Shown one piece after another: positions 7,286-38,727 of a DNA stretch of 64,000 nt. The first letter of the stretch is position 1. Each line of letters opens with the position of its first letter. Below the pieces are notes generated by a model, which saw only the letters and a list, made by a program, of their open reading frames with translations, was not told the DNA's origin and searched no databases. The stretch covers positions 92,070,001 through 92,134,000 of the forward strand of contig OX638151.1 of assembly GCA_951804945.1 (NCBI GenBank), in the 5' to 3' direction. Both the position numbers and the translations under genes were made by a program. The DNA comes from Podarcis cretensis. Its lineage: Eukaryota.

Positions 7286-9361
7286 CCCTAGAGCTTAACT
7301 AACACAGTTCAATTTACTTTAAAAGTTGGGATTCTTTAAGAATCTTTATATTTCCTTTGCTTCCCATTGTTACTATACTGCCCGGCTGAGGGGGCTCAGT
7401 GCTTCTGTGGCAGGAGAGTCTTCTCATGAACAGATTGCTGAATGATGGGATAGAATGAGGGCAGGAGCAGCCCTGAACTTTCCCCACCTCCACACCCATT
7501 CAGAATATAGCCATAATCTTTCCCAGAGAGCAAGACAAAGCACAATGAACACAGCCTCCAGCATCCCACGCCCCAGAGGCATTGCACAGGCATGCAGGAA
7601 GAAATAGATCCTGCTCTGAGTAGTGTGTTTATATCAAACAATTCCAAATAAAAGACAATGGGGAGAGGAACTGAAGAAGCTGCAATTCAACTGTCTTCTC
7701 TGACAGCTGGTGCTTATATATGTATTAGCGGCAGATATTTATTTCATTTACTATGTGCACCATATGAAGAGCCAGCCCTCCTGTGACAGAGTGAAGGTGA
7801 GGTCAAGCAGAGTCCTGGGCGAGGTCCAAAAAGGCTGAGATTAGCTTTCATTCCTGGGGGTTGTCCCAAGAGTCATGACCTGGGATCATGCCAGGCATTA
7901 TGCAGTCAAGAGGTTTCATCCAAACCTGGTTCCCAGGATCAAGAAAAGTACTGATCAATCAGTCAGGGCAAAACAAAGAGGTGTGGAGGTGAGCTAAGGC
8001 AAGGGCAACAGGCCACTGGCTGTGCATTTGTTCTGCTGAAGCATAGTTCTGGTTTCTGTCTTGTAACCCCGGCCCTCATCCAAGAAAGCTGTCTGGCAGA
8101 ATTTATTTTAATATCCAGTGTGCCTAAGATAAACTCAGTGGCTGAAAGCAAAAAAACAACCCTGCCTTGGGCACTAGGTGTTAACTTCCATGCCATAATG
8201 AACTTTCATTTCCTAAGATGGCACAGAAGGGAAGCACAACACTAGGTCCTCTTGCCTGCTCAGCACCAGAATCAGTAGAATAAAGGCATATAAAGGCCTG
8301 AGCAAATGAGACATCATTTACCTGGCATACAAAAAATAACAGAAGGAGCCCTTCTGAGCCAAAGATAGGGCTCCCCTGATGAAAAAGCCCTCTTTCAGGT
8401 TATCAGACAATAGGACCTGAAGAGATATAACAGTGGGCAGTGGAAGAAACCACTTTTTAAGGTACACTTGCTTCCAAGATGGGTTTTTTAAACTTGAAAG
8501 TCATAAAAAGTACTTAAAGGATTGCTTTTTCCCTATGTATTTCCTTCAGTGTGACCAAGCAACGTCAGAGGTCTTGCTTTGCATCTCCCCAACAGCAGAT
8601 ATGCAGTGGGTGAGAACAATGAACAGGGCAATATCAGTTACGGCACCAGTGCTCTGGACTGCCCTCCCCAGGAAAGCATGTCTGGACCCACCATTGCGTA
8701 CATTTCACAAGCTCTTTAAGAGCTCTTTTGCAAACCCTTTGATGGCTCTTAGCAGATCTCTCTGCTACTGTGATGATAGTGGTTGTGCTACTACCATTTG
8801 TTTTTCTGTATTGTTTTACTGGCTCTTCTTTTCTTTTATGGCTTTCCTTGCCATATAACAATGCAAGGTATCCCCCAGATAAATATGGGATGAACAGACG
8901 TTTGAGAATTTCCCCTGTCTTTCTCCACCACATCCTTGAAAGGGGATCAATGATATCCCTGAGGAGCTGTAGTCTATGCAATCTACTGGCCTGTTCAGGC
9001 TTTCTTTTTGTAATTTGCAGTAAGAATTGGAACAATTATGTTACCTCTTTGGGTAAAGTTTGTAATTATTACTTCATTTTATAATGTATATGGAACTGTT
9101 AGAACAAGAGACAAAAAATAAAAGATGAAAAACAAAACTATAAAATAGGAATGTAGAATGAGTTAAAATAACAAAGTAAAGACTTTCAACTTTACCAGAT
9201 CATCTATAGTTGTAGATTTGCCAGGCATGTGACAAAGGTTGTCTTGAAAAGTATGGTATATGTCATAAAGCAATGCCAAATCATATCAAAAGTGTAATAT
9301 TTGGGCTGTTTTCTATTGAGTTGCAATTACTATTCATGCTGTCAAGATCATATATAAGACT

Positions 9362-9548
9362 AAACAAAAAAAATTCCTTCCAGTAGCACCTTAAAGACCA
9401 ACTAAGTTAGTTCTTGGTATGAGCTTACGTGTGCATGCACACGAAAGCTCATACCAAGAACTAACTTAGTTGGTCTTTAAGGTGCTACTGGAAGGAATTT
9501 TTTTTGTTTTGACTATGGCAGACCAACACGGCTACCTATCTGTAACTG
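9362..9548. mobile_element. Penelope-like element remnant collapsed to a 148-bp palindrome plus tail
   Basis: 9362-9509 is self-complementary with one mismatch; motif agcaccttaaagaccaac...gtctttaaggtgctactgg...ccaacacggctacc is typical of reptile Penelope termini as recalled; 13-bp direct repeat atatataagacta at 9350 and 9550. Confidence 0.7.
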
Positions 9549-10292
9549 TATATATAAGACTAGTTCTTTTGACAATATATATTTACATTGGTATCATCAA
9601 AAATATTCAGTAACATTAATTTTGGACAACAAACAATATTTTCTTTAGTGATATTTATCATTTCTCTCAAAATTAAATTAAATTTTGCACCAACTGACAT
9701 TCCCGCTATAAATGATAATATGTGCCAAGTTTATTGCAAACCCTCTAACAGTCAGGTGATATAGAATAAAATATTTTTGACATTTGCAAAGGCTTGCAAC
9801 ACCATCTGTGTAACATTTTTAAGTTTTCCCTAAGGAAACCAGAAACAGATTTTTAGGGTCATGATGCCCAGCTTTTATTCCAGTCCTTGGGAATAATTTG
9901 TGTGCCAATATCCAGTTCCCATATCTTGTTAAGAGGTGGCATAGATCCATAAGTTACATTGAGCAACGTAGAGTACAGTTTAGAAACTAATCCTTTCTCC
10001 CCTCTACGCATTGTGCTTCATAATTTTTCAGATGGTGTTAAGGGTCTTAGAGCTTGTGTTTTTACATGTTCTTTTAAAAATAAAACACTGAATTTAATTA
10101 AAATAAATCCAGTTTGTGTTAAGTTAAGCCTTCTTTCTCTCTGACAGTTTTCACAATTTTTTCTTAATATCGCAAGTAAACGCTGCACTTTTTGGGTTTA
10201 GACTGCAACAAGCTCTTTCTGTGTCTGATTGTGTTTTGGAAACTTCTGACTTGGAGAACTGGTGTTTCAATACGTGCGTGTGTATTGGGATA

Positions 10293-10649
10293 AAGTTAAA
10301 GGTAAAGGGACCCCTGACAATTAGGTCCAGTTGTGGCCGACTCTGGGGTTGCGGCGCTCATCTCACTTTATTGGCCGAGGGAGCCGGCGTACAGCTTCCG
10401 GGACATGTGGCCAGCATGACTAAGCCGCTTCTGGCGAACCAGAGCAGCGCACGGAAACACCGTTTACCTTCCCACCGGAGTGTTACCTATTTATCTACTT
10501 GCATTTTTGACGTGCTTTCGAACTACGAAGTTGGCAGGAGCAGGGACCGAGCAATGGGAGCTCACCCCGCCGCGGGGATTCGAACCGCCGACCTTCTGAT
10601 CGGCAAGTCCTAGGCTCTGTGGTTTAACCCACAGTGCCACCCGCATCCC
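10293..10649 (-). mobile_element. Full-length Sauria SINE (Squam1-type, tRNA-derived)
   Basis: Minus strand starts GGGATGCGGGTGGCACTGTGGGTTAAACC, has B-box GGTTCGAATCC and a TTTACC-type tail; TSD tgtattggg(a/g)ta at 10281-10292 and 10651-10662. Confidence 0.88.
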
Positions 10650-10667
10650 TTGTATTGGGGTACTGTA

Positions 10668-10875
10668 TATTTATTTATTATTTATTACATTGTATATCCC
10701 CCCTTGCCTCCAAAGAGATCAAGGCAGCATAAAGCTCCCCCCCTCTCCATTACCCTCACAACAGTCCTGTAGGCTAGCCTGAGAATTGGTGACTAGCCCA
10801 AGGTCACCCAGTGAGCTTCATGACCAAGTGGAGATTTGAACCTTGTTCTCCCATGGCCTAGCATGACACTCTGAT
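10668..10875 (-). mobile_element. Degenerate tRNA-derived SINE (Squam3/MIR-like)
   Basis: gactagcccaaggtcacccagtgagcttcatg...gatttgaacc (reverse B-box) with a (TTTA)-type tail at the left end. Confidence 0.6.
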
Positions 10876-11489
10876 TTATTTGTTTATTTATGAAAACACT
10901 CAGCATGTTCATTCCATGTACATTTTATCTAGAACATCTTTGGGTTGTATTCATTTAGTCATGCTTAGAGTAGACCCACTGGAAACGAACGGGACTTAAA
11001 TCAGTTCTAAAGCCCTGTTGATTTCAATGGATCTACTCGTAAGCACGACTAAGTCTGGATCCAATTTGCTTGGCAGAATGTGTTCATCACATGCAACAAT
11101 GCATTTTGGCAACAGTTGCACACAGAGCTTCACAAATCCCTGTTGTTGGACTACAAAGATTAGTCTCTTTCTTTGTCTTTAGCATCCGATTCAGGTTATG
11201 TGAGGGCAACTTGAATGGGTTTAATAGCACACTTCTGAAGGTCCTTTCAGAAGGACCTCTCTATTTCTTGAAGATATGCACCTATGTTTGCAAAAAGAAG
11301 AAAAACAGAGCTTTGTATTATTATTTCTATGAACCATTCTATGAATGGTTACAATGGGGGGGGGGGGGGGGACCAAGGGCTAAAATGTTTTGATTTGAAA
11401 GATAGCTAAATTGATCTTTTAATCTACTCCTTGACGATACCTGATGGGTATTTTTATATGTTTTATTACAAATACTGTGTGTTTTAAAT

Positions 11490-11620
11490 TTTGTTTTCCC
11501 TCTGATTATTTGGGGGGGGGGTTATTGGGTTGTTCTTGTGTTTATTTTGATTATGTATTTTGTGTTTTTATATCGTGATTTTATCCTGTGAACCGCCCTG
11601 AGACCTGTGGGTATAGGGCG
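11490..11620 (+). mobile_element. L2-like 3' tail fragment
   Basis: ggttattgggttgtt...tgtgaaccgccctgagacc..gggtatagggcg; matches the 43468 element in opposite orientation. Confidence 0.6.
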
Positions 11621-11625
11621 TTTGT

Positions 11626-11656
11626 TTAATTAATTAATTAATTAATTAATTAATTA
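11626..11656. repeat. (TTAA)n microsatellite; a degenerate one also at 35898-35955
   Basis: Direct reading. Confidence 0.9.
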
Positions 11657-12029
11657 TATTATTCCTAATAATCTGTATTATCTATTTTTATATATTTAAA
11701 TGAGTTTTAAACCATGCTTCATTTACAAATAAGAATATGAAAAGTGGTTCACATTATCCACTTTATCCATTAATAAGCCAACAGTCAACCACAAAAGTGT
11801 GGGCTTCTTTCAGACAGTGACCTGGTTTTCACGCCACACTAAGACAAACCACGTCTTAGTGCAAGTGTGCAGCTCCCGGAGAGGAGATAATGGTCATCTT
11901 GCTGCTCCACAGTTGTTTTGCTGCTGCACCAGACTGAGCTAAGCCATGGTTTGATTTAGCCTGTCATCTTAATTTGGGCTTGTGGCATGTCTCTCTCCAA
12001 CATAATCATGATCTGTAACCAAGGTGTTT

Positions 12030-12570
12030 CCTGTGGACGACCACCATTTGAGGCAGAGACCTAGCTTTTTGGTCTCCATTCCTTGTTTTAGCAGTAGTAT
12101 CCAGTGAGGGGTTGAGGGTATGTGTATTGCTGTTGTCCATAAATGCACCATCTCCTGGGACACGCTATCAGAGGGTCTGTACCTGGTGCTTGGCCAAAGA
12201 AGCAGACTGGGGGTGCTGCTGGTCTATCAACTACCCTGTTGCCCAGCAGCATGCTTGATCAAGCTAGTCAAGGTAGTCTCTGGACTACTTCAATATCCAT
12301 TAGAGGCTGCCCCTGTATTGGCTGAGCTCAAGACTTAAGGCCTTCATTACAACCATGCAGCTCTCTCAAATGGTCATTGGTCCAACACATCATTTAGGAG
12401 ACACCCTTGATGGTAGTCTTTGCCCCAAATGACCTGAGGGATGGACTGAGGTTGGGTGTGGAAGTGCACTGCATTGTCATGCTCCGATCATTTCCTGGTA
12501 TAGTTTAGATTGGTAGCAACAATTTCCTGACTGGCAGTTGCCATTAGAAGTTTTGCGGCCAGGTACTATA
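12030..12570 (+). mobile_element. Degenerate L2 LINE ORF2 endonuclease fragment
   Basis: Translates GVLLVYQLPCCP and SQMVIGPTHHLGDTLD (APE-type PTHxxGxTLD motif), disrupted by stops. Confidence 0.6.
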
Positions 12571-15419
12571 AGTATGCTGGTGTCACTCAGCCATAACATC
12601 TGAATTAGGAGCAGTTGTGCATGCCTTGGAACAGTGCCTGGACCCAGTTTTAGCTTATTGATGTTTTTACTTGTTTTGAATGTTATAAATACTTGTTTTT
12701 AGTGATTTTTTTTTACTGTTATTGTTACTGGTTTATTCTTTTTGTAAACCGCTCTGAGGTTTTATTATAATCAGTGGTATATAAATGTTGTGAAATAAAC
12801 AAACGAATATACATGACGTGCAAAGCAGACCACTAAGTAATAGTAAAGTAATAAAGGTCAAGTGGTAGTCCCAAGCTCATTGGAGGAAGGGAATAGCAAA
12901 TTGGAATTGCGACTAGTGACTCTACTTTGAAATCATTACCAAGAACAGTGGTCCATAAGCATATATTTTTACAATTAACAGTAGTCAGTCCACTTTTAAC
13001 GAGTATTGCTTTTGGGTAGCTGAGAAGAAGATTGTCTGCTTGTAGTTCTTATATCTTATCTATCAGTATTTACATAGAGAAAAGAGGATTTTGTTTTGTA
13101 TTCAGAAATCCTACCCAAGAACAAATCTTACAGTGTTTCCAATCAAAGCTCCATTTTCAGTTACTTACAGTAGCTGGCATATTGTATTTCATGGTGTTTC
13201 TCTTTCATTCTCTCACTTTCATTCAGTTTTATTGTAGACCTTTGTGCTTTAAAGAAAGTACGCATTGAATGAACGTGGGCAAAGGAAAAATTCAGCAGAT
13301 GAACTTGCTTTACTTGGGTTACACCATGCCCATTTCCTCACAAAGAGCCAACCAGCTAAGATGATCCTGAAAAACAAAAGCCCTTGTTTAGTTTGTATTT
13401 TGCTGAACATTTTAATGAGCTACTTCATGCTAGGGTGGGGTTGTGGGGACGCAGCATTCAATCTCTGCCACGTAATTACAATCCTTGAAATGTCTGCAAA
13501 ATATTTCAGCCATAAACCTGCCACACTCTTTATTTATTCTTTTATTTATTAAAGCACATGGAATTTATGTCAGTTTCTATCACTGAATGGCTCATTAAAT
13601 CCCCTCCCCCATTTAGACCATTACTAGATGCGGAAAGGTTCGTTTCAGTATATTTCCAGTGTTCAGATATATGTCAAGAGGTTCCTTCTAATTGCGCTTA
13701 ATAGGAGCTCTGGGCCCGGATGAATATTCCAGTTGATGAGCTTGAACTAATATTTAAATTGGTTTAGGTCGGTGTCGTAGATGGTGGCCTCTTACCTTGT
13801 TGATTGAATCAGTGCAATGTGTTAAGTCTTCCCTGAAGTATGTGGTTTCTTCACAGGCGCCTTCAAAAGTAAAATGATATTTTGTTGCTGCATCAACTTC
13901 AATATTTGCATCTGTTTTGCAGCTTAAATATAAAATTAAAAAAGAATAATAATTTATTATCACTACATTAAACAAAAAACTCAACATACATTTGGGGTGG
14001 CTACCTGCATACAGACCTTATCCTTTGTCCAGAGCCCTCTGTATATTCTAATGCTCACATGGAGCTCCTTTACAGATGGTCTTCCCCATTCATTTAAATG
14101 GAAGGAGTAGCTGCGTGTTCAGGTGCTGCCTTGGACATGTACTGTACAGTGCCTGTTCAACAAATCCATGCTCAGCTGACTATAAATACATTCTGGGTTG
14201 GGAGTGACAGACTTCCTTCAAAGGAGGGTCTTAAGGTTCATTGTCATTCCAGTACTGAACCATTTTGCTGCTTGAAGCAGAGCCCAGATAGTGTCTCCTG
14301 CCCCCCATCCAGGGCCATTGCTTTGAAAACACTTGCTGCACTTTATTTGGGAATATCCTTTGTGGCACACAATAAGATTTAGTTTGGAGTAGTGAATATG
14401 TATGGCAATGGACTGTCAGAAACTTCATTCCTATCTTCGACTATCCCTTCTTATAGTGCTGCCTTCCCAAGGGAGTGGATCCTTTTCTGCTGTAGTTTTT
14501 GTATATGGTTTGTTGTGACTGCATCTTGTGGTATGAAACATTGTCTTTGTAGTGGGACATGATGGTTGTTAACAACGTGGGCATTTTTATATGTAGATAT
14601 GCTGATATACATATGGCAAATAAATTAACAGTCCACCAGCTTTTAGAAATGAGCTGCTCTCCTTGCTCTGTATTATTTTTACTCTCTTCAGTGCTTTAGC
14701 TATTTATTTTATTAAAAATATAATATGCCTTCCATCTAAAGAGATCCAGAAACAAATAAGTAAAACCACTCATGCTATTACCTCAATAGAGTGCGGTTTT
14801 TAGGAGTACTGGGTGAAATTTTTGAAAAGTTGCAGCACTTCTTTGCATGTTAGGATTTGCAGTTGTCTGAGAGCCAGGAAGTGTAAAAAAATATCAAGCA
14901 AATCCCTTTTCATTGGATTAACTGGATTGTGAATGAAGAATGCATTCTGTAGTCATTCAGAGAGACCAATTTGCCGGCTAAATCCCTAATTATAGAATAT
15001 AATGTACATGTGTTACAAATATAGAGTGAAGGATGCAATCCTATGGAGATTTTTCATGGGGCTTGCTCAGAAGTAAGATCTGGCTGTTAATTAAAATTGA
15101 TTTATGGTGATAGTAGAAAGTAATTCAATTTGATTGAATTCTTATTATATAGCTGGTTAGTTTAGTTTATAATGCTACATACCATTAAAAGTGACCATCC
15201 ACTATATTCAGATTCCTGTTAATCTGCATAATTTGTAAGTACTGGATTATTATTTTTGTTATGAAGCAGAAAAAGTGCAGTTTGTCAGTGTTTTAGAAGG
15301 GTCCTGGGTAGTCTGGTCCATATTTGTATGGTGTCAGGTTACCCGGTTAAGCAATATGTACTAAATTTTTGACATTTTGAACTAATTAGCACCGGTTTTT
15401 CCATTCTGCTTGTGAGCCA

Positions 15420-16000
15420 CCACCCACCCACCCACCCTCTTTTCCTCCAGAATTACAGAGCACAGACTCCGATATGCAGGAGTGCTGCAGACAGGAACTT
15501 GCTCCTTTGTGCACCTCCCCCTGAAAAGGCTCAGCCTCGTTCAGAGACAAGACAAACAGTAAAAGTGAAAGATGGCTAAGTAAAGTCATGTGGGGCAGGA
15601 AGCGTAAGGGGGAAGAGCTAAGAGGTCAGGCACCTCCTAATGCTTCGGTTGGAATAATACTCAGGGAACGAATGCGATAGGAGCAGATGTTGCCTAAAGA
15701 ATAGCAAAGGGCGTTTCTTTTAAGCTCACTATTGGGAGGGATGCCTGTCAGACCATAAGAAACCAGGGAGAGCCGGAAAGCTTATCAGCTGCGCTGCGCA
15801 GGACATGTGAGCGTTTATTGTTGTGAGCTCTTTTTAATGCCTTCTTCGCTACAGCTGCGCTTCAAGACGGAGATGAAAACAGTGACCACGCTCTTTTAGC
15901 CACCGTTTATGAAAAAAAAAAGAAGGTCCTGCTGAATTTAAACAGAATGTGAATCTGTTGTGCCTTTGTGCCGGAGTGGAGGAAGAAACGCTCTAGTTTC
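15420..16000 (+). promoter_or_regulatory. Putative internal DST promoter for the KIAA0754-like exon
   Basis: Local rise in GC and CpG with no recognisable repeat; CAGCTGCGCT twice (15786, 15852), CCGGAA ETS-like site (15773), TGCGCTGCGCA NRF1-like site; about 1-1.5 kb upstream of ATG 17015. Confidence 0.4.
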
Positions 16001-16267
16001 CTGCTGTGTTGCCTTAAAACAGGACAACAACTTTCAAGGAATGTGTTCTGCGAGTGAAACTGGGGAAAAAGTTTCTTTTTCTACTAATTCTGTTCCGTTG
16101 CTTTTTTGTATTATTATTTCATTGGTCTGGCTCCTCAGAAAACTGTTGTGTTTCCCATGGAACTTCTGAACGCGCCACAGAGAAGCTTTAAGGAAGCAAG
16201 GAATAAACTGCCTTTTGAATCGAGGTTATTTATAGCTGCTGCCAAAAAAGGGGGAGAAAGCTTCTTC

Positions 16268-16317
<50 letters not shown>
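16268..16317. repeat. (TAT)n microsatellite
   Basis: Direct reading. Confidence 0.95.
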
Positions 16318-16318
<1 letters not shown>

Positions 16319-17014
16319 AACTCTGGATATACCTTTGTTTTTCCTGAAGCCTTTCTCTGTGCCTTGGTCTCCACAGTCCACAGCTCTTCTGGTTTGTTTT
16401 TCTTCAAAAGCGTCCACAACATGGCTTATTTATAAAGGAGATGGAATTCTGCAAGCCATTTAAATGGATTACAGTTAATCTGTCACCTCCTGAATATAGC
16501 GTGCTGCCTGCTATAATGCTGATTCATTTTGAAGACTTAATCTGGAGATTTAAGACACACATTTTGACCTAAAAATTGAAATGGAATGCTATGTGGGAAG
16601 TTCTGAGTCTTTTGAGCCACTTAAAGATTTTCCTGGGGTTTGGGGGTTTGTACATTTTGTTGGTGTCTTTGTGCATTGAGTTAGTATTTTAAAATATTAA
16701 AAGGTGTGGGGTTTTTTTGTTTCCCCTCTCCCCACCCCCTTAAGCTCAAGCACTTTATATTTTAGGGGCAGGGGGAGAAATGTTTTAAATCACAGCCAGG
16801 TAAACCTACACAGATGCACTGATTACGACCTTAACCGCCTCATAAATTATTTCCTGTGTTTTAGTATGTAAGCATCTTTCTGCTGAGGGCAAGTTTACTG
16901 TACTTTTTAAAAACTGCTTTTCTATTACTTTATTTTAATTTTTACTTTATGTGTGTTACGTGTCTCCAATAAGATAGCCTAGCAGCAGTGCTAGACCTGT
17001 TAATTCCTGCAGAA

Positions 17015-18301
17015 ATGGGGAAGCCACTGAGCAGGCCAGACTGTTTACGCCAGAATCCTCCTTGTGTAGGAAAAGGTGATGAAGAAGAAGAGGATATAAA
17101 TATTGAGGACTGTTATGTTCCCCAGAGGTCAATCTATGACACAGTGCGGCTGAATGAACAGATTGACTCAGGTTCTAAAGGCAGCCTCTCCTCCAGGCAT
17201 TTCTCAGATCGGACTTTGCCGTATAGTCATAGAACACTGGACCTTAGTACATTGTGCTCCAATGGTGCCCTCTCCTCTTCTAGTGTCTTTGAACTCAGAG
17301 GACGGGAAGCCAATAAGCTAGATGAAAAAATGATCTTTGATGCCCTTAAGCTGAACAGTGACATCATTCGAACAGCTGGCTTGCCCAAAGCAAAGTATCA
17401 CACAGAAAAGAAAGAACATAGGAGATCCTGGAGGATGCTTGTTCCACCAAATTTTGCAGACTATGCAAATAAAAGTGAGTGTTCACTTGCTGGGACTGTT
17501 GATGTGTCCGACTTAGCAGCAACAGGCCAGGTCAAATGTGGGACTAGTTCTCTAACTTCCGAAGAAGACGACTCTGGTCTGTGCAGTCCTCCAGCAGAAA
17601 GAGAAGAAAAACAAGATGTGCTAGAAGGGGAACAAACTCAATTTAGGAGCATATCTTCCATAGACGATAATCAGTTTGTAGGTAAATTTGGATCATTTTC
17701 TCCTACCATTTCTAGTAGTGAACATCAAATTTCATTGCTTACCTCCAGAAGTGCCCCTACCAGTGGACACTGTCGAGTAAAATTGCAGAATGCTTCACAT
17801 ATAGAGCAAGAACCTTTCTGGAACTATGAGGGCAACCAAGGGGAAGGAGATGGACATTGCAGTCCACTGACATATTTGAAAGAAGACCTCTTAGCACATC
17901 CCCAATGGCTCCTGGATGGTGAGAGGGAACATGATATCACTTTAGACAAAGAGGAAGTGAGGAACAGCGCTGAAGTTAATGAGCCATTAGACACCCAAGA
18001 CAGGATGATTGAAAAGGACCTCCTGGATATTGCAACTCAGGATATAGATATTTATGATGATGATGCAGCTTTACATGCTAATGATACGGACTTAGTAAAA
18101 TATGTGATTTTGCATGAAACTGAGGAAAGTAATATGGCCCATATAAGTGCAATAGAAATGTCCTGTCAGGCTTTAGAGGCTAATAATACCACATGCTGTC
18201 AAAAAGCAAATCCAATCAGCGCTGAATTCAGCTTTTGGACTACAGGCATGCAAATAGAACAAACCTTGGATACAGTGTGCAATGGCATGTTGTCTTATAA
18301 G
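17015..18301 (+). CDS. KIAA0754-like alternative first coding exon of DST (429 codons, MGKPLSRPDC...MLSYK)
   Basis: Long stop-free ORF in AT-rich intron; Kozak gcagaaATGG; in-frame TAA at 16970; donor AAG|gtaatt in phase 0, matching the next DST exon. N-terminal blocks resemble human KIAA0754/MACF1 internal exon as recalled. Confidence 0.82.
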
Positions 18302-19662
18302 GTAATTCCAAACTTAAATGCATTCTTTTCATGCTGCAGGGTGGGTTATTTTTTAATTTTTTTTTTCTTCTGTAATTGCATCACGAATGCTTATGTTTAG
18401 ATTTTGCTAATCTACCCAAAGAATTCCTTTAGAATCATTTGCCCAACAAGTTATTAGAAGGCAGAAATTGGCGAGATGGTCACTTCAGTAAATTGATTAA
18501 GGGCAGTTTGTGACAGGGTTGATTGCTTCCAGCTGTTTGGTTGCATGGCTATTTATTGTCCAGATGGTGCTTGTTACCCTTTATTTGGAATGCGTCCACT
18601 AGGCATTGATGTTCAGCACCCCCTCCTCCCCTCCCCTCAAATTATGTTTCAAGCAGCCAATGCCATTCAAGGGCAGATAGGCCTTCCCTATTCAGATTTA
18701 ACCAGATTTCAGCTGCAGCCATATACTGTATACACTTTCATGGGAGTAAGGCCCATTAAACCCGATGGGCATGCTTCTTCTGAGTTGACACGTATAGGAT
18801 TGCACCGTTCATCATAAAGGTATACACAACGATGCTCAGATTGCTGCGGTTTCCAAAGTACACAGATTAAAGGCTTGTTGCACGTACTGAAATTATTTCC
18901 TTGCATCTTCATGCCAAAAAGTAGTCCTAAAGTTGTAGGGGATTTTTTTACAAGGGATCTTGTAACATTTACTGAGCGGTGAATGAAGTAAGGAAGTAGA
19001 AAACAGCTTTGTAATAAGCATGGGGAGCTTGTGAAGTCTTTAATTTAATTTTGTTCTTTTTGTTTTTGGTCACTCTGATCTGGTTGTGTCTTGAGTTATT
19101 TTAGGACTTGTTGCTAAGCTGTTCTGGCAAACTCTAGCCTCAAGTCCTACTTTTGTGAGTAGGTATGTGTATCTAAACAACAAATCAAGGGGAACAACTC
19201 AGTTTGGATTGCTATGGAATTGTCTTAAAAATATATGAACATCTGAAATAGAAGAGAGTTGGACTGAAGTACTGAATTACTAGTTCCATGGGCCTAAACT
19301 GGAGCAGGACTTGTGTTTCTCACACAGCAACCTCAAAAACTTCTTTTGAAAGAGAGGGGAATTTCAAAAGTAGTTTATGGAACCTGGGGTGTGTACATGT
19401 GCCTGCCTGTTTGATTGCCAAAGATACTACTGAGCTAACACTTGGGTATGTGTAAATTAGCTTTTGCATCCCAGCCCTTGTTTATTTCTCTTAAGTAAAG
19501 AGAACTTGCCCATATTATATATTATTTTGTGGGAAAGGTAAGACCTGTTTGCTACTTGGTTCCTCAGAACTCTGCTTTATAATGCCCCCCCCCCCCTTAA
19601 CAAATCCCACAATGTCCTGCAAATAGGTAGTGCTATTAAGTGCATCAAAAACAGCATTATAC

Positions 19663-19688
19663 GTGTGTGTGTGTGTGTGTGTGTGTGT
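19663..19688. repeat. (GT)n microsatellite
   Basis: Direct reading. Confidence 0.95.
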
Positions 19689-21164
19689 TCCTGGTTGCTA
19701 CTATGTAACACACCACTGTGTCTGAGGATTATTGCATGTAGTCTCAAACGTGTGTGAGCTGTCCATGTTCGGACTTAAGTTCCTTGCTGCCTCTGCGAAA
19801 CCCCCTTCTCCCAGTTATTTGTGTGGATTCAAGGCCTTGAGGAGAGATGGGTCACACACTGTCCTGTGTGTCAAATGTGCTTGCTGTGTGTTGAAGTGCT
19901 GGCTGCTGTTATGACGTAAACTTAGGTGTGAAAATGTGCTGTTTGCAGACTATCCTAGAAAATCTGGGTTTCTTACACTATGTACATAGCAAGTTTCTGC
20001 TTTCCTACTAGTGTTGTGCTTGACCATTTTGGTGTACAATTTATGTATCCCAACTTGGGGAGGCTTCTTATCATTTTTGTTTTCAATTATATGAACATAA
20101 AAATTACTTAGGGCTGATATTGAGGTACATCAACTATAAACATGCTTTATTTTCAGACTGTTCTAGGAATTTGGGTGTCCTGGGCTACTTGAGTGTCTAG
20201 CTTCATAGGTTCTGAGAAATAACTTTAGCCATACTGAGGTACACTTGTAGTAGCCCCATAACATTGCTTGTATTCAGGGAATGATATTACTAGTGGCAGC
20301 TGAAATATATATTCAGGATGTGGGCCATATTTGCTAGTAAAGCTATAATAATAAAGCTCAGTACAGTATTGCAGTACAATGGCTTCACAATATTTTGCTG
20401 ACTATAGTGAAATTGCTGCCAAGGGACAGTGTCTTAGTAGTAGTAGAAGAAGAAGAAAAAGAAGATTTTGGGGGAGGGGAGGGAGTATTTCAAAGGTAAG
20501 AAGCTTTAAGACCACAGTTTGTATAGCCTGGGTTCATAACCCACCAACAGCATTTGATGCCTGTGGAATATTTTCTGTCACTAGCCTTTGCAAGTCCTCA
20601 AATGAACATCACTTAGGTTGGTGGGTTGAGTTAACCTGCATTATGATATCATTGTGTGAAGCATGCTTGAATTTCTTGCCAATGAAGACCACCTGGGAAA
20701 TAAAGGGACATGGTCCCCACTGTTTTTCAGTATCTTCTAAAACAATATAACCATTACTAGTCTTATCTAGAAGGTGAATGCTGGTGTAGTTCCTTAGTCA
20801 CATGATCAGCTCATTCTCCCAGGCCATTCCTGAGGTCCAGGCTCACCATACTATAGTGACCCCCAAATCGCTGGATAGCGCTTGCATTTCTCCACTGTGC
20901 AGTTAGGACTGGGGCAGGTCCCTTCCTGCATGTGCCCAGCATCTCACTGCTCACTTGGTCTGTAGGAGCCACGTTGTCCAACACCAGCTCCTCCTATTAG
21001 AACTAAGAGCACTGCATCATCCTTAAATGGCTATCCAAATCATTATGCACCACAGAAACATATGCTGAGCATATTCAGACGATTGACTAATTTCCTCACC
21101 AAACTTTAAGCATTTCCCTTGTTCACCGTTACTACTCATACTTTCAAACTCTACTATATAGACT

Positions 21165-21860
21165 CTGGGCACTGTGTATTTGGTCTTTCAGAAAGGGTTT
21201 GACAAAGTACTTCACAACAGACTCCTTAGTAAGCTTAATCGTGGAATAAAAGGAGAGGTCCTCCTACTGTTCTGCAATTAATTAAGGAACAGGAAGCAGA
21301 CAGTAGGAATAAATGGGCAGTTCTCCCAATTAAGGGATCAGCATTGGGACATGGACTTTTAAACTTGATTATAAATTATAAAAGTGAGCAGTATCGTAGC
21401 TGAGGTTGCTGATGGTACCAAGTTGTTCAGGGTGGTTAGAACAAAAAGATTGCAAGGAAATCCAAAGTGATCTATCCAAATTGGCTGAATCATGCTAGTA
21501 CCCAGGACCATTGTATGAAGCTAAATGTTGGAAGATTCAGGACAGTACTGAAGAAAGAACTTCTTCATGCAGTGAATAGTTTTAACTGTGGCAAAGAAGT
21601 AGTGGTGACCATTACTGTGATTGTCTTCAAAAAAGAATTAGACAAATTCACTGAAGATAGAGCTGTCAATGGCTGCTAGCTATGATGGCTATGCTCTCTG
21701 TTGGAAGAAGTATGCTTCTGTACGCCAGAGTCACAAGTCCTTTTTGCACTCAAGTCCTGCTTTCAAGCTTCCCACAGGCATCTGGTTGGCCACTGTGAGA
21801 ACAAGATGTTGGTCTAGATGGGCATTTGGCATGATCCATCAGGGCTCTTATGTTTTTATG
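21165..21860 (+). mobile_element. Degenerate CR1 LINE (RT fragments plus 3' UTR)
   Basis: Translates FQKGFDKVLHNRLLSKL and VAEVADGTKLFRVV (decayed FADDTKL motif); 3' end ggcatctggttggccactgtgagaac...tgatcc. Confidence 0.78.
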
Positions 21861-22366
21861 GGCTACTTGTGTCTGCTGGCCATACGCAAAGGATAACTGT
21901 TTGCACAGAGTCGCATAGCCCCAAGAAGAATGGGCTATTGTGAACAGATATCTGAACAATTACTACCCACAATATGTCATCCTCTTTAGTTTGACATAGG
22001 TGTCCACAACGTGTACCTTTTGCTTTAAATATTGTTTGAGCATCTATATTAGGAAGATTCAGTATGGGGCACTCTTCCTTTTAAATACAGTGCTTGTTTT
22101 TTTTTATGTAATAGCAGTTTCTTAACTCCTGTTTGGGTTAATGTGTATATAATTTACTCTGAGTTGTTTTGTGTTTACAACATTAAGAGCAATTTTACAT
22201 GTACACTCTGTAGCTAAATACTGTCTTTCAACACTATGTTCATGACATGCTGTGTGATTTTACTACTGATATCTGCTCTGGTCGTTACTTATGCTCAGCA
22301 TGTTTCAGACTTAATAATCTAAATGTGCCTTTGCCTTTCTTTCTTTCTTTTCCTTTTGATCTGAAG

Positions 22367-22528
22367 GTATTCGAGAAGGAAAAGATTGAGCCACTACAGG
22401 TTAAGCAACAGGAGGTAAATTGGTTGGGTCAAGGCCTTATTCAGAGTGCTGCTAAAAATGCTAGTACTGATAACCTTGAGCGTGATCTTGAGGATGTTAA
22501 CACAAGATGGAAAACTCTCAACAAAAAG
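22367..22528 (+). CDS. DST: DST exon ([11 protein letters not shown]...KTLNKK), phase 0-0
   Basis: Long pyrimidine tract, ctgaag|GTA ... AAAAAG|gtatgt. Confidence 0.93.
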
Positions 22529-23446: not shown

Positions 23447-23617
23447 GTTGCTCAAAGAGCAGCCCAGTTGCAAGAGGCACTGCTCCACTGTGGGAGGTTT
23501 CAAGATGCTGTCGAATCTATCCTTAGTTGGCTTATTGACACAGAAGACCTTGTGGCTAATCAGAAGCCTCCATCTGCTGAGTTCAAAGTAGTGAAGGCCC
23601 AAATACAGGAACAGAAA
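23447..23617 (+). CDS. DST: DST exon (VAQRAAQLQ...QIQEQK), phase 0-0
   Basis: tgttag|GTT ... CAGAAA|gtgagt. Confidence 0.93.
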
Positions 23618-26061
23618 GTGAGTGGAAGTTATTTATCTATCTTTAGATTAATTATATTTTCTCTGTCACCTGCTCAGTGGGGTATTTTAAACTGTTTTTA
23701 AAGCTGTGTGTTAATGTTGTAACCCACCCGGGGCCTTAGGATGAATAGTGGGCAATTAATAACAGTAATAACATGTGACGGCCTGGATAACAGTGTGGCT
23801 GAGTGTGTATTAGACATGCGCTATAAGAGGTGCAGTTGCAAAAGAACCTGAAAAAAATACCTTTCCATAGTCTCTGTCATCCCATCACTTAGGATGGTTG
23901 TCATGGATGCTTCTGTGGGGGATGTGTTTGGCTTTTTTCAGGGGAAGGGCAAATTTTCTCAACCCAATCTGTGAAATTCTCTTTAAAGATTTGCCCTTTG
24001 ATACTTTCATTTTGGAATTCTCCACTCATTTTAACAGAGGCATCCAGACTGTAGCATATTAGTGGGACAGGATCTGTTAGTCCTGCCTTTTACTTGTATG
24101 GCTCGGATTCAGTGGTAGACAGCGGGTTTTCCTGGGGGAAAGTGGCTAGGCAAGCGGAAGTGTGGGATGAGCCCTAAATTGCTTTGGTTCATTCAATGAG
24201 AAAAGTGACCAAGAAATATAACAAATAGTTGGTATGTAAATTTATATCCAGCTCTTCTTTCATCATGGAACTCAATGGCGTTCCCAGGTAGCCTCCCATC
24301 CAGGCATTGATTGCATCCTTTGCCCGGGGAAATGTGGTTTTCTTCACTTCTTTGGGAAATGTGGGGAGCTGGTGCAGACTGGGAGGGACAGATGCCATGT
24401 ATAGCACAAACAATCATTTCATTGGACCAGTTTTCTCTATATATTGCAAGGAAAACTCTGGAATATCTGTGCTGGTTCTTGGCATCATTTCATGCACGTG
24501 TACATTTCACTGGATGCACATCAAAAACAATTATTTCAAGGATCAAAAGCAATCTGATGTTTGAAAAGACATCACTGATATTGTGAAAAGGGGCAGGGGG
24601 AAGAACATTGTAGAGCTACTCCCTTAAGTTGAAATAAAGTTCAAAATTTTGTCAGGGCTTCAATCCTCCTTCATCATTTTGACAACCCTCCACCCCACCC
24701 CTTCTCAGCTAATCTCTTTTTCCCATATATGCCATTCAGTGTGGATTTATACGAGTTGCCTATACATATGGGTTAGCAAGGAATGAAATCTGTGCCTGGT
24801 GTCAGCTTCTGCTCCACCCCTTACTTCCTGACTTCCGTCTCTAGAGTTTTGTAGAATCTGTTTTGATTTAGGGTAACATCTTGGTGTGCCTGTATCTTCA
24901 GTTAATAATGTCAAACACCCCTGCTTCAGATTGTTCAACAATTGTTTGTAACACAGTTGCTGATGAATTGTTAGACCCTCACTTAAAAAGGGGGGGGGAG
25001 AGAAGGTTCATATTAAATATTGAATTGGCAGTTGTGGAGTAAATACAGCACATCAAACTCTGTAACCAGATCCATAATTACTTTCCTGTTCAAAATAAAT
25101 GTATGAGCAAGGGAAGAGCAGGTCACAGCATGCACAGCATCAGAGAGAAGTTGTGCTCTCTGAGCAGTCTTAACAAAAGGCAGTAGGAGAGAGAAGGGGG
25201 GATTTTTGGCTGAAACATAGAAGGCAACCCTCAGGGAAGAGCACTGCATGAAGCTTAGTGAATCAAGTCCTCAGGTTGTCTGGCCAAAGTGAGTATGCAA
25301 AGTTGCAGCTGCGCGCAACATAATAATCTCCAAATGATCATATGTTTGTACTGAAAATTTGGGACAGAATCCAGAGAATGTTATAACATGTTTGATTCCC
25401 TATTAAAATAATTTGGTCTTAGGCGCATCATTAAGCCCTGAATTGTGTTCATCTTATTGAATGCGGCCACAAGTGTTTCTAAAGGTGAGCACTATATAAA
25501 CAAACAGATATTTCTCTGGATTGCAGTGGATAGTTGCAAACATCACCAGCGTATTGAAAAGATGGGGAGGGTTCTTATGTGAAGTGGAAAATTTCCCATC
25601 TTTTCTTTTTCCAAAATGGAAAAGCTTCCCCAAAAGTTCCCAGCACTGTCATGTGTTATAAAATGTCCCACTGTGATTCCCCCCTCTCCCTGCACATGTC
25701 AACATCATACCTCATATAAGGCATATATATCTGTAGCCCTTCCAGAGCTTCCAGGATAGCATTGAAAAGAAATCTGAATGAAAACATTTGGAAGGATGCT
25801 AGACCTTTACAACTGATGCTAAGATTGGCACAGTTTGCTCGCTCTCATAATGAAATTACTTATTTATGCAATTTATGGCACTTGCATTGTAATACTGCTG
25901 GCACCCTCACAATTTCCTGCCATCTCAGAAAATTGTTCCCTTAAGCCTGCCTCTTTTTGCCAGTAAACAAGACCTTGAAGAATCTGCCTCTTAATCTTTT
26001 TACAGCCTTGTAGTGAACAGTCATTTCCTGGCAATTTGATTTTTGATTATTTTGTCTCCAG

Positions 26062-26228
26062 CTTCTCCAGAGATTGCTGGATGACCGCAGACCCACTGTT
26101 GAACTAATCAAGCGTGAAGGGGAGAAAATTGCAGAGTCAGCAGAGCCCGCTGATAAAGAGAAGATCTTGAAACAGCTGAGCCTCCTGGATAGCAGATGGG
26201 ATGCACTGCTTGATAAAGCAGAAACAAG
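26062..26228 (+). CDS. DST: DST exon ([10 protein letters not shown]...DKAETR), phase 0-2
   Basis: gtctccag|CTT ... ACAAG|gtacct. Confidence 0.92.
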
Positions 26229-26636
26229 GTACCTGAAATGTTTGCATTCACTTAGGGGTATAGTAGGGTGTACTCCTTGATACAGCATTAGAAACTAATG
26301 TGGAGCTATAGCAACATTTTCATCCAGTTTCAGATTCGCATTTGAAGCTAAATGAGAAAATGGCTCTGAGTATATTACAAGTTTTATTTTTAGAAATTTC
26401 AGTGAAATAATATGGGGAAATCAGTATCACATAATCACCCGTTCTTGTAGTAAAGTGGATGTCTCCCATAATCTTCCATTTATGGGAACTACTTTTAGGT
26501 GTAGTTCAGAGATTTTCAAAGTAATTCATTGAACATAATTAAACCGAAGTAGTTCTTTCCAAGCGCTGGTTTTAATTTTTTAGTATTTCATACATCCCTC
26601 ATCCCACAAAATGTGCTTTGTTTTCACATATTGTAG

Positions 26637-26796
26637 GAATCGTCAGTTGGAAGGTATCTCAGCTGTAGCACAGCAATTCCATGAAACTTTAGAACCACTG
26701 GTTGAGTGGCTAACCATCACTGAAAAGAAGCTTTCAAATTCAGAACCCATTGGAACACAGGCTTCCAAACTACAACAGCAGATTTCTCAACATAAA
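26637..26796 (+). CDS. DST: DST exon (NRQLEGISA...QISQHK), phase 2-0
   Basis: ttgtag|G ... CATAAA|gtaaga. Confidence 0.93.
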
Positions 26797-27025
26797 GTAA
26801 GATCTTAATGTGCCTTTCATTGCGGCAATTATTTTATGATTTGTAAACCAAAAGTGGAGTTTTCCCCCCAACACATTTTTTTATTACTTTGTTTATATTC
26901 TTCTTTTACCATCAAAGTTATATTCTTTTGGTTGTTCTTGAGTTGTTTTCATATTTGGTTTTATGGTTTCTTCTGTTTGCTTGTTTTTCTTTTCTTTTTC
27001 TTACTGCTTTGAAAACTTCATTTAG

Positions 27026-27352
27026 GCCTTTGAGGAAGACATCGCCACTCGCAACAAAAATTTGGAGCAAGCTATTAATATTGGTCAGGCTTTAAAGGCA
27101 TTGAGCTCCAAGGAAGATAAGGAAATGGTGCAGGAGAAACTAGATTCTTCAGAAGCCCAATACATTGAGATTCGAGAGAAAAGTGGCAGTAGAGCTCAGC
27201 TTCTACAGCAAGCCTATTGCAATGCTCAGATTTTTGGAGAGGATGAAGTTGAATTGATGAATTGGCTGAATGAAGTACATGAGAAACTGAGCAAACTGGC
27301 AGTCCAAGACTACAATACTGACTTGCTTGTGAAACAACAAACTGAAATGCTG
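27026..27352 (+). CDS. DST: DST 327-nt exon (AFEEDIATR...QQTEML), phase 0-0, probable cassette exon
   Basis: catttag|GCC ... ATGCTG|gtattt; 109 codons, one spectrin-repeat length. Confidence 0.9.
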
Positions 27353-27602
27353 GTATTTCCATTTATTTTCTGTTGTTTTTATTTTACCATTTTTAGCATT
27401 ATTTTGTATTACTTCTCATATTTTATTTTTTTATTGTTATAGTCATTTAATCCTGTATCCTGTTCATTTATTTTTAAGCCTTTATCCTCCCCGCACCCTG
27501 CTCCAATTCTCAGAGAGAATAAGTGGCTGCTTATAGACTTACAGTTTTATAGATTTTAAATGATGACTTCTCTGATGATAAAAGCATTCTAAAATTTTCT
27601 AG

Positions 27603-27687
27603 GCTCTCCAAGAAGAGATTCTGCTCAGAAAGCAAAATGTTGATCAGGCTATACAAAATGGTTTGGAGCTTCTCAAACAAACAACAG
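27603..27687 (+). CDS. DST: DST exon ([10 protein letters not shown]...LKQTT), phase 0-1
   Basis: ttttctag|GCT ... ACAG|gtgaga. Confidence 0.92.
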
Positions 27688-27957
27688 GTGAGAAAGCCAT
27701 GAGGAAATTAATGATTTATGACAACAAAGACAAGTAAAGTAGAACTTTTGGGGGCTCACTGACTCCTACTGGAACCTTTTTAAAGCTATTTTTTTTTTAA
27801 AAAAAAAACTTTTTTGTTCATAAGTAATGGGATAAGTAATTATGGGTGCAGTGTGTAATAAAGTTTCACACCGTAATACTATACCTGTCCACTCAGAGGT
27901 AAGCATGGCTGAGCTCAGCAGAGCTTACTCCCAGGTATGTGAAAAGAAAGCAGTAAT

Positions 27958-28110
27958 GAGAGTTGGTGTAGCATAGTGGTTGAGAGCATAAGCTGGGAGT
28001 CCTCAGTTCAAATTTAACCACAGCCATGAACTTCCTAGGTGACATTAGGCAAACCATTAACTCAGCCTCAGCCTTCCTGCTGTAATATTCTACTGGTCTA
28101 CTGTGCAGAG
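27958..28110 (+). mobile_element. Degenerate tRNA-derived SINE head
   Basis: A-box-like gtgtagcatagtgg, B-box-like gttcaaat, followed by cagccatgaac...ggtgac; similar to the element at 10668-10875. Confidence 0.5.
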
Positions 28111-38632: not shown

Positions 38633-38727
38633 GTAGACTTCAGAATTTTACATTTCAAAATAAATGCATGAACAAGTTTCCACAAGCAGAACTTTATATA
38701 CCTGCCCGTGTATATTTTGCTTCCTAG

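What the first reader, a model, noticed from the sequence alone, without database searches (positions are those of the whole stretch)
17015..18301. Hidden KIAA0754-like first exon predicts a short internal-promoter dystonin isoform
Seen: a 429-codon stop-free frame inside the longest intron of the window (16,022 nt; next longest is 4.2 kb), unrelated to spectrin repeats, with strong Kozak context (G at -3 and +4), an in-frame stop at 16970, and a phase-0 donor AAG|GTAATT that joins exon 22367 in frame (...MLSYK|VFEKEK...). Recalled: human KIAA0754, nested in a MACF1 intron and now treated as a MACF1 isoform N-terminus, begins MGKPLSRPDCLRQNP and shares the blocks IEDCYVPQRSIYDT, NEQID, KLDE..IFDALKL, RRSW...PPNF and a terminal TGMxI. 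Inference: DST has a paralogous internal first exon dating from before the DST/MACF1 duplication. It would give a protein lacking the actin-binding and plakin domains but keeping the distal spectrin repeats (about 1479 aa in this window) and presumably the EF-hand/GAR microtubule-binding end. I do not know of this being among the classical BPAG1a/b/e/n isoforms, but automated annotations may already contain it.
Basis: partly seen in the sequence, partly recalled or inferred. Interest (0 to 1): 0.92.

Follow-up and report, generated by a model that had tools for sequence, protein, structure and literature searches.

The report
Conserved internal start exon of dystonin
The open frame in the big dystonin intron is a real start exon, conserved from sharks to mammals, that gives a roughly 2,650-residue dystonin without its actin-binding and plakin parts; gene-prediction pipelines already contain it, but nobody has studied what it does.

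Summary
Window 17015-18301 (+) is a 429-codon ATG-initiated frame with a stop upstream at 16970. It ends in a phase-0 donor AAG|GTAATT inside the 16,022-nt intron between DST exons 4870-6344 and 22367-22528. Chance expectation is about 8e-6 per window.

The exon has full-length orthologues at 53-80% identity in squamates, turtles, birds and mammals, and N-terminal-half matches in shark, sturgeon and teleosts. Public 'Dystonin' models of 2,100-2,750 aa, and three 9-10 kb assembled transcripts, start with it. They join it to the homologue of exon 22367, followed by spectrin repeats, EF-hands and a GAS2 domain.

Its first ~160 residues are paralogous to KIAA0754 / 'MACF1 isoforms 6/7' (E=1e-41). 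In MACF1 and in a hagfish model the corresponding first exon joins the homologous exon, so the arrangement predates the DST/MACF1 split.

AlphaFold predicts disorder. Gly2, Ser6, Cys10 and Cys17 are invariant, which fits a lipid anchor, but that is inference.

It is not new. Pipelines annotate it, and a 2017 spectraplakin review notes such a conserved extra exon. No paper found characterises it.

The parts
4870..6344 (+). Canonical DST spectrin-rod exon that precedes the host intron; ends ...NQQLNVFK, phase 0, donor GTAAGA
   Evidence: spectrin-like tblastn matches
6345..22366 (+). Host intron of 16,022 nt that holds the alternative start exon
16970..16972 (+). In-frame TAA 15 codons upstream of the ATG. 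It bars any N-terminal extension in this species.
17006..17014 (+). Acceptor-like cctgcag|aa directly before the ATG. It may be the 3' splice site for an upstream non-coding exon. If used from exon 6344, the frame hits a stop after 5 codons, so the exon is not an in-frame cassette.
   Evidence: sequence; frame reasoning only, not tested with RNA
17015..18301 (+). Alternative start exon, 429 codons from MGKPLSRPDC... to ...CNGMLSYK
17015..17065 (+). Putative lipidation head MGKPLSRPDCLRQNPPC. M1 G2 K3 P4 L5 S6 P8 C10 R12 P15 C17 are invariant in 35 sequences.
   Evidence: function inferred
17015..17455 (+). Module shared with KIAA0754 / MACF1 isoforms 6/7 (aa 1-147). Blocks: IEDCYVPQRSIYDT at 17102-17143, NEQID at 17153-17167, KLDEKMIFDALKL at 17315-17353, RRSW..PPNF at 17420-17455.
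17549..17593 (+). SLTSEEDDSGLCSPP, an acidic Ser-rich block conserved in the DST-type clade only. It contains a DSGxxS pattern.
   Evidence: any degron or phospho role is conjecture
18302..18307 (+). Phase-0 donor GTAATT. In 74 of 77 orthologous read-through translations the codon after the exon end is Val (GTN), so GT is kept at the same phase.
22367..22528 (+). Receiving exon [11 protein letters not shown]...TLNKK (54 codons, phase 0 at both ends), shared with the long isoforms
23450..63219 (+). Further spectrin-repeat exons used by the short isoform. They map to residues 485-1912 of the Haliaeetus model and 484-1806 of the Phrynosoma model. The rest of the gene lies beyond the window.

Best explanation
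Window 17015-18301 is the orthologue, in this squamate, of an ancient alternative first coding exon of dystonin (DST).

A transcript that begins in or just upstream of this exon is spliced from the phase-0 donor at 18301 to exon 22367. It then uses the ordinary distal exons. The product is a protein of about 2,600-2,700 aa with these parts:
- a 429-aa intrinsically disordered head;
- roughly the distal two thirds of the spectrin-repeat rod;
- two EF-hands;
- the GAS2/GAR microtubule-binding domain and C-tail.
It has no calponin-homology actin-binding domain, no plakin domain and no plakin repeats.

The head starts with an invariant Met-Gly-x-x-x-Ser motif followed by invariant cysteines. The most likely working model is therefore a lipid-anchored (N-myristoyl, perhaps also palmitoyl) membrane-to-microtubule tether. 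In that model the membrane anchor replaces the actin anchor of the long isoforms.

Shown: the exon, its deep conservation, its conserved donor, the spliced full-length models and transcript assemblies in other species, the paralogy with KIAA0754/MACF1 isoforms 6/7, and the predicted disorder.

Inferred: splicing and expression in this species, the position of the promoter, and lipidation with its consequence.
For: The ORF and splice signals are present, and chance expectation is 8e-6 per window.

Conservation. 194 homologues were found. They cover the full exon in squamates (62-80% identity), turtle and birds (about 60%) and mammals (about 53%).

Donor. A GT at the same phase is implied by Val in 74 of 77 read-through translations.

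Spliced short models join the exon to the 22367 homologue in Laticauda P0010 and naked mole-rat P0049. Limosa P0013 is also spliced but skips that exon.

Long models named Dystonin start with MGKPLSRPDC and carry the junction ...K/Q|VF[EQ]KEEIEPLQ: Phrynosoma P0209 (74% identity over the exon), Pseudonaja P0204, Haliaeetus P0205, Rhinolophus, Sus, Balaenoptera, Castor, Suricata and teleosts.

Assembled transcripts. Three Logan contigs of 9.1-10.1 kb encode uninterrupted 2,636-2,690-aa versions (P0210, P0216, P0224). These can only be spliced mRNA.

Domains. Pfam on P0205 and P0204 gives 14-15 spectrin hits, EF-hands at 2304-2365 and GAS2 at 2382-2456.

Paralogue and cyclostome. The MACF1-type and hagfish first exons join the homologous exon. 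The DST-type clade has 99/98 support, and the window sits within squamates at 100/100.

Structure. AlphaFold gives mean pLDDT 45.5 with only two short helices. G2, S6, C10 and C17 are invariant.
Against: Many database models are single-exon 'uncharacterized protein LOC...' entries that read through the donor. Some transcripts may therefore end in the intron.

No CpG island or evident promoter lies upstream: CpG o/e is 0.23-0.36 in 16000-17000.

Lys at position 3 breaks the strict PROSITE myristoylation pattern. From my own knowledge, neuronal calcium sensors that start MGK are nevertheless myristoylated.

In mammals an in-frame upstream ATG 38 codons earlier is common in ORF calls. If it were used it would bury Gly2.
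Confidence: 0.85

Rival explanations
1. A stand-alone nested gene. The exon is translated as an independent protein of about 430-500 aa from a transcript that reads through the donor and is polyadenylated in the intron. It would not be part of dystonin.
For: NCBI names many orthologues 'uncharacterized protein LOC...' as single-exon models (P0001, P0003, P0012, P0015, P0031). A human cDNA clone entry of 424 aa exists (P0055; listing only). KIAA0754 was long treated as a separate gene. [quoted passage not shown]
Against: The donor GT is kept at phase 0 in 74 of 77 species-level sequences, while the read-through tails are short and unrelated to one another. Transcript assemblies of 9-10 kb and dozens of models join the exon to the rod. 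The two forms could coexist.
Confidence: 0.1
2. The exon is the first coding exon but not the first exon. Transcription would start at a more distant promoter, with one or more non-coding exons spliced to the acceptor-like cctgcag at 17012, so there would be no promoter immediately upstream.
For: An AG preceded by a pyrimidine-containing stretch lies 2 nt before the ATG. There is no CpG island next to the exon, and a slightly CpG-richer patch lies at 15500-15999 (o/e 0.63).
Against: Logan ORF calls in mammals run unspliced for 38-98 codons upstream of the ATG, and these extensions resemble one another. That fits either genomic DNA or a contiguous 5' UTR. No transcript with a spliced 5' UTR was seen, but DNA of those contigs could not be fetched.
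Confidence: 0.3
3. A chance open frame, or a decayed pseudo-exon without function.
For: No Pfam family matches. The second half of the exon is poorly conserved and is predicted to be disordered.
Against: Chance expectation is 8e-6 per window. The frame is open over its full length in more than 75 species-level sequences from squamates to mammals, and 25 positions are invariant.
Confidence: 0.01

Closest known systems
Predicted short dystonin isoforms in public annotation, for example Phrynosoma platyrhinos P0209, Pseudonaja textilis A0A670YVC8 (P0204), and Haliaeetus albicilla 'dystonin-like' of 2,687 aa (P0205)
   Same: Orthologous first exon (59-74% identity over all 429 aa). Same junction to the VF[EQ]KEEIEPLQ exon. 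Same downstream exons, which map onto the window.
   Different: Nothing structural differs; this is the same feature in another squamate. Those entries are computer predictions without functional study.
[quoted passage not shown]
   Same: Shares the N-terminal ~150-residue module MGKPLSRPDC..IEDCYVPQRSIYDT..NEQID..KLDE.IFDALKL..RRSW..PP.F (E=1e-41). It is spliced to the homologous rod exon, LFQKEQVDPLQ. The downstream architecture is the same: spectrin repeats, EF-hands and GAS2.
   Different: It is a paralogue, not an orthologue, and forms a separate clade. The MACF1 exon is about 990-1,130 aa against 429 aa here. Beyond residue ~160-250 the two are not detectably similar.
Internal-promoter short isoforms of other spectrin-superfamily giants: dystrophin Dp260/Dp140/Dp116/Dp71 (PMC7372313) and nesprin short isoforms (PMC3981789)
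   Same: A unique first exon lies inside an intron of a giant gene. The product lacks the N-terminal actin-binding domain but keeps the distal rod and the C-terminal functional end.
   Different: There is no sequence relationship. The unique head here is long (429 aa) and conserved, and carries its own candidate membrane anchor. The promoter here is not mapped.
Dystonin/BPAG1 isoform 3 N-terminus, reported to hold myristoylation or palmitoylation sites (as summarised in bioRxiv 10.1101/122010)
   Same: A candidate lipid anchor at the N-terminus of a dystonin isoform.
   Different: That leader lies at the 5' end of the gene and precedes a CH2 domain, the plakin domain and the whole rod. The exon here lies deep in the rod region and replaces all of these.

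Membership tests
Short dystonin isoform start exon (DST-type clade) | Full-length sequence orthology to the first exon of annotated short Dystonin models | tested here: met
   74% identity to Phrynosoma P0209 over residues 1-429, and 80% to Elgaria P0001. In the tree the window falls in the squamate group (100/100) inside the DST-type clade (99/98).
Short dystonin isoform start exon (DST-type clade) | Lies in the DST intron directly upstream of the VF[EQ]KEEIEPLQ rod exon | tested here: met
   The exon is at 17015-18301, between exons 4870-6344 and 22367-22528.
Short dystonin isoform start exon (DST-type clade) | Phase-0 GT donor compatible with the phase-0 acceptor of the receiving exon | tested here: met
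   AAG|GTAATT at 18301/18302 and ag|GTATTC at 22366/22367. Val follows the exon end in 74 of 77 orthologues.
Short dystonin isoform start exon (DST-type clade) | Junction 18301->22367 present in RNA of this species | not testable with these tools
KIAA0754 / MACF1 isoforms 6/7 N-terminal module | Significant similarity of the N-terminal module | tested here: met
   Hyaena 'KIAA0754 homolog' P0127: E=1.0e-41, 46% identity over residues 1-255. Latimeria 'MACF1 isoforms 6/7-like' P0125: E=2.7e-42.
KIAA0754 / MACF1 isoforms 6/7 N-terminal module | Orthology, meaning it sits inside MACF1 and falls in the MACF1-type clade | tested here: not met
   The flanking exons are dystonin: 84-100% identity to Dystonin models against 45-77% to MACF1. 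The tree separates the two types. The exon is a paralogue, not a member of the MACF1 locus.
KIAA0754 / MACF1 isoforms 6/7 N-terminal module | First exon spliced to the homologous rod exon in the paralogue | tested here: met
   P0166 residues 1131-1187 and hagfish P0143 residues 599-663 map to window 22346-22534 directly after their first exons. The junction motif is LFQKEQVDPLQ in bird MACF1 models.
N-myristoylated proteins (NMT substrates) | Gly at position 2 and a small or hydroxyl residue (Ser/Thr) at position 6 | tested here: met
   MGKPLS; G2 and S6 are invariant in 35 sequences across both paralogues.
N-myristoylated proteins (NMT substrates) | Myristate actually attached, with G2-dependent membrane localisation | not testable with these tools
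   This needs metabolic labelling or mass spectrometry.
Internal-promoter isoforms (dystrophin Dp-type logic) | Own transcription start inside the host intron | not tested
   No CAGE or 5' data were available. No CpG island lies upstream. The acceptor-like AG before the ATG leaves an upstream non-coding exon possible.

The most novel reading that the evidence does not exclude
The DST and MACF1 internal start exons encode a shared, vertebrate-wide head of about 150 residues. It would be lipid-anchored (myristoyl-Gly2 plus palmitoyl-Cys10/Cys17) and intrinsically disordered. It would turn the distal rod, EF-hands and GAR end into a membrane-to-microtubule tether.

This would be a third functional class of spectraplakin isoform, at least as old as the cyclostome-gnathostome ancestor. 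The isoform catalogues used for dt mice and for HSAN-VI genotype-phenotype reasoning leave it out. N-terminal gene traps and ABD/plakin mutations would spare it, whereas C-terminal truncations would hit it.
Probability: 0.45. Interest if true: 0.6.

Novelty: already known. Interest (0 to 1): 0.35.

Why it matters
Papers on dystonin disease and mouse models reason from four promoters and eight isoforms (PMC7413632). None of those starts inside the rod.

A conserved isoform of about 300 kDa that keeps only the distal rod and the microtubule-binding end would survive the N-terminal dt alleles and gene traps. It would be lost only with distal or C-terminal mutations. That could bear on why phenotypes differ with the position of the mutation, much as the short dystrophins do for DMD.

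The same applies to MACF1 isoforms 6/7. The exon itself is not a discovery, since pipelines already predict it. What is open is its function. That is directly testable by G2A and Cys mutants, isoform-specific knock-outs, and 5'-end and long-read data.

Tried and rejected
- Pfam on the exon: no family even at E<=1.
- ESM Atlas on residues 1-175: best score 0.78, below any useful level.
- AlphaFold with a 35-row alignment: mean pLDDT 45.5, so no fold search was run, because a low-confidence model gives meaningless matches.
- In-frame cassette exon of the long isoforms: rejected. From the phase-0 end at 6344 into the AG at 17012 the frame stops after 5 codons, and reading from further upstream meets the TAA at 16970.
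- The recalled terminal 'TGMxI' similarity to KIAA0754: not found in non-human homologues.
Afterwards I sent no DNA letters of 17015-18301 to any DNA search tool.
So there was no orthologous DNA, no dN/dS, no comparison of upstream regions, and no look at the Logan transcript contigs themselves.
- The spliced model: not typed or joined. The exon was searched by reference, and long isoforms were reached through a database protein id with a region (P0166 residues 1-180).
- The human cDNA entry P0055: seen only in the hit list and left out of alignments. No contig taken for human was fetched or compared. P0216 and P0224 are of unknown, mammal-like origin and were used only as listed proteins.
- Literature: searches for KIAA0754, dystonin or MACF1 with internal promoter, short isoform or myristoylation found no functional study.

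Full report
**What is in the sequence**

Window 17015-18301 on the + strand is an ATG-initiated frame of 429 sense codons.
- It is preceded by an in-frame TAA at 16970-16972.
- It is followed by GTAATT, so the last codon (AAG, Lys) ends in phase 0.
- It lies in a 16,022-nt intron. The canonical dystonin rod exon upstream is 4870-6344 (...NQQLNVFK|GTAAGA). The exon downstream begins at 22367 after ...ctgaag.

The downstream exon is 22367-22528: 54 codons, phase 0 at both ends, with the donor GT at 22529. This is a small correction to the coordinates I first used.

The joined reading ...CNGMLSYK|[11 protein letters not shown]... is in frame.

The intron has a stop-trinucleotide frequency of 0.053. 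An open run of 429 codons therefore has a probability of 6e-11 per position, or about 8e-6 for the whole window on both strands. No other stop-free run in the intron exceeds 161 codons.

**Conservation**

A word-indexed search restricted to proteins of 236-750 aa gave 194 hits.

| Group | Coverage of the exon | Identity |
|---|---|---|
| Squamates (Elgaria, Pogona, Candoia, Laticauda) | full length | 62-79% |
| Turtle and birds | full length | about 60% |
| Mammals (elephant, opossum, naked mole-rat) | full length | about 53% |
| Whale shark, sturgeon, teleosts | N-terminal half | 54-74% over the aligned part |

The names given by the sources are mostly 'uncharacterized protein LOC...'. [quoted passage not shown]

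A full HMMER pass over 1.84 billion cluster representatives gave 47 hits. They fall into two kinds:
- DST-type proteins of about 430-490 aa, matched over the whole query.
- Proteins of about 950-1,400 aa or longer, matched over residues 1-116 to 1-255 at their own N-termini. These carry names such as 'uncharacterized protein KIAA0754 homolog' (Hyaena, E=1e-41), 'MACF1 isoforms 6/7-like' (Latimeria) and 'MACF1 isoforms 1/2/3/5' (teleost models of 3,242-3,300 aa). A 1,899-aa hagfish protein is among them.

The recalled blocks IEDCYVPQRSIYDT, NEQID, KLDE..IFDALKL and RRSW..PPNF are all there. The recalled terminal TGMxI block is not, and residues 200-429 have no detectable counterpart in the MACF1-type exon.

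**Is it spliced to the rod?**

Among the short hits, two models join the exon to the homologue of exon 22367: a Laticauda Ensembl model (...SNK|AFEKEEIEPLQ...) and a naked mole-rat model (...SGQ|VFQKEEIEPLQ..., followed by a Pfam spectrin repeat). A Limosa model skips that exon and joins the next one.

The length filter hides long proteins. I therefore searched with a database MACF1 model (P0166) restricted to its first 180 residues, which admits proteins of 1,815-5,775 aa. This returned 72 long proteins that start with the module.

About 30 of them are DST-type and are named Dystonin, with lengths of 2,100-2,750 aa. They include Phrynosoma, Pseudonaja, Haliaeetus, Gopherus, Pelusios, Rhinolophus, Pipistrellus, Sus, Balaenoptera, Castor, Suricata, Ursus, a titi monkey and many teleosts.

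Three are Logan assemblies in which contigs of 9.1-10.1 kb encode 2,636-2,690 aa without interruption. The same exons span more than 46 kb in this window, so these contigs must be spliced mRNA.

Nearly all the tetrapod models carry the junction exon-end|VF[EQ]KEEIEPLQ at residue ~429-431; some (Ursus, two Balaenoptera/Castor models and the two turtle models) reach the same rod exon with a truncated or divergent first-exon end. Most of the teleost models reach it through [AV]FQK[ED][ED]I[ED]PLQ.

Pfam on the Haliaeetus and Pseudonaja models gives 14-15 spectrin-repeat hits, EF-hands at 2304-2365 and a GAS2 domain at 2382-2456.

The Phrynosoma and Haliaeetus models map exon by exon onto the window from 17015 to 63219. 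That leaves about 1,480 residues of rod inside the window.

**The donor**

In an alignment of 77 non-human DST-type sequences, the residue after the exon end is Val in 74. A Val codon is GTN, so this is what a conserved GT donor at phase 0 looks like in read-through translations. The three exceptions are two spliced models and one truncated sequence. After that Val, the read-through tails are short and unrelated between lineages.

**Age and paralogy**

In the teleost MACF1 model, residues 1131-1187 come directly after a first exon of about 1,130 aa. In the hagfish model, residues 599-663 come directly after a first exon of about 600 aa. Both stretches match window 22346-22534, and the later residues follow the window's exons in order. 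Bird MACF1 models have the junction ...PDNE|LFQKEQVDPLQLKL.

A maximum-likelihood tree of the first ~200-230 residues gives these results:
- One DST-type clade from whale shark to mammals (99/98 support).
- The window inside the squamates (100/100).
- MACF1-type sequences apart from that clade.
- The hagfish on a long branch whose place is unsure.

So the alternative start exon, its target exon and its N-terminal module were present before the DST/MACF1 duplication. Invertebrate homologues were not seen at phmmer sensitivity. That is not proof of absence.

**What the head looks like**

- No Pfam family matches.
- AlphaFold with 35 aligned sequences gives a mean pLDDT of 45.5 and only two short helices, at residues 44-51 and 104-112. 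The head is best read as intrinsically disordered with short conserved motifs.
- Invariant positions across both paralogues are M1 G2 K3 P4 L5 S6 P8 C10 R12 P15 C17 D32 Y34-I40 D103 D109 K112 R136 S138 W139.
- Gly2 with Ser6 is the core requirement of N-myristoyltransferase. From my own knowledge, Lys3 departs from the strict PROSITE pattern but occurs in myristoylated neuronal calcium sensors. Cys10 and Cys17 are candidates for palmitoylation.
I tested only the conservation, not the chemistry.
- The DST-type clade also keeps an acidic Ser-rich block, SLTSEEDDSGLCSPP (residues 179-193), and the exon end ..LDTVCNG...

**How it most likely works**

A transcript starting at or upstream of this exon yields a dystonin of about 300 kDa. 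It has no actin-binding, plakin or plakin-repeat parts. It retains the distal rod, the EF-hands, the GAR domain and the C-tail, which are the microtubule-binding end. The lipidated disordered head would tie that end to a membrane.

The isoform structure is well supported by other species' data. The anchoring role is inference; I put it at about even odds.

**What remains open**

- The promoter. There is no CpG island next to the exon: CpG o/e is 0.23-0.36, with 0.63 at 15500-15999. An acceptor-like cctgcag ends 2 nt before the ATG. An upstream non-coding exon is therefore possible.
That also ruled out dN/dS and any comparison of upstream regions.
- The human cDNA entry in the hit list was left out of the alignments, and no contig taken for human was fetched.

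**Is it known?**

- Databases: yes. NCBI and Ensembl pipelines predict the isoform in many species. The paralogue carries the name 'MACF1 isoforms 6/7' in NCBI- and UniRef-sourced entries.
- Literature held here: the spectraplakin review of Voelzmann et al. (bioRxiv 10.1101/122010, 2017). [quoted passage not shown] This is very probably the same exon, but I could not see the figure.
- A 2020 DST disease paper still counts four initiation sites and eight isoforms (PMC7413632).
- Searches on KIAA0754 returned only gene lists.
- Searches for an internal-promoter or short isoform of DST or MACF1 found nothing functional.

**Verdict**

The feature is an orthologue of something already annotated, so its novelty is low. 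Its function is unstudied, which keeps some interest.

Noticed in passing
P0158, P0241, P0154, P0157, P0161, P0159 (teleost proteins, not in the window): A third teleost group of about 430-990-aa proteins, named Si:ch73-305o9.3 in trout and huchen. It starts with a diverged copy of the same head (MGKPLSRPCCFRQ...) and forms its own clade (100/100). I did not determine whether it is nested in a second macf1 copy or stands alone.
   Followed up: partly
P0029-P0064 and others (mammal-like Logan ORF calls), upstream of the MGKPL start: In many mammal-like sequences the frame stays open for 38 or more codons upstream of MGKPL. It begins with a recurring ATG (MLKTLHSSVQKYTFLKDAL...FVLT.YK). If this ATG were used, Gly2 would be buried and myristoylation lost. 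In the window the same stretch is closed by TAA at 16970, and birds have only 5 extra codons. The last ~12 upstream codons resemble the window's (S.AA...L.I..).
   Followed up: partly
window 17549-17593: The DST-type clade keeps SLTSEEDDSGLCSPP from shark to mammals. It contains a DSGxxS pattern that resembles a phospho-degron, inside an acidic Ser cluster. I did not see it in the MACF1-type sequences I looked at.
   Followed up: no
window 27582-27701, 34603-34710, 40721-40840: Three rod exons are present in the Haliaeetus dystonin model but absent from the Phrynosoma model when both are mapped on the window. They may be alternatively spliced rod exons, or the models may simply differ.
   Followed up: no
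P0013 (Limosa lapponica 'dystonin-like'): This model joins the start exon directly to the exon after 22367-22528 (VAQRAAQLQ..., window 23450-23620). That skips the usual receiving exon. The join is in frame because the skipped exon is phase 0 at both ends.
   Followed up: no
window 15500-15999: This is the only stretch within 3 kb upstream of the exon with raised G+C (0.47) and CpG o/e (0.63). It is a possible place for a distal start site or a non-coding exon.
   Followed up: no
P0143 (Eptatretus burgeri, 1,899 aa): A hagfish model has the same head on a first exon of about 600 aa, spliced to the homologous rod exon. The arrangement is therefore at least as old as the cyclostome-gnathostome ancestor. 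Its branch in the tree is very long (1.89).
   Followed up: partly
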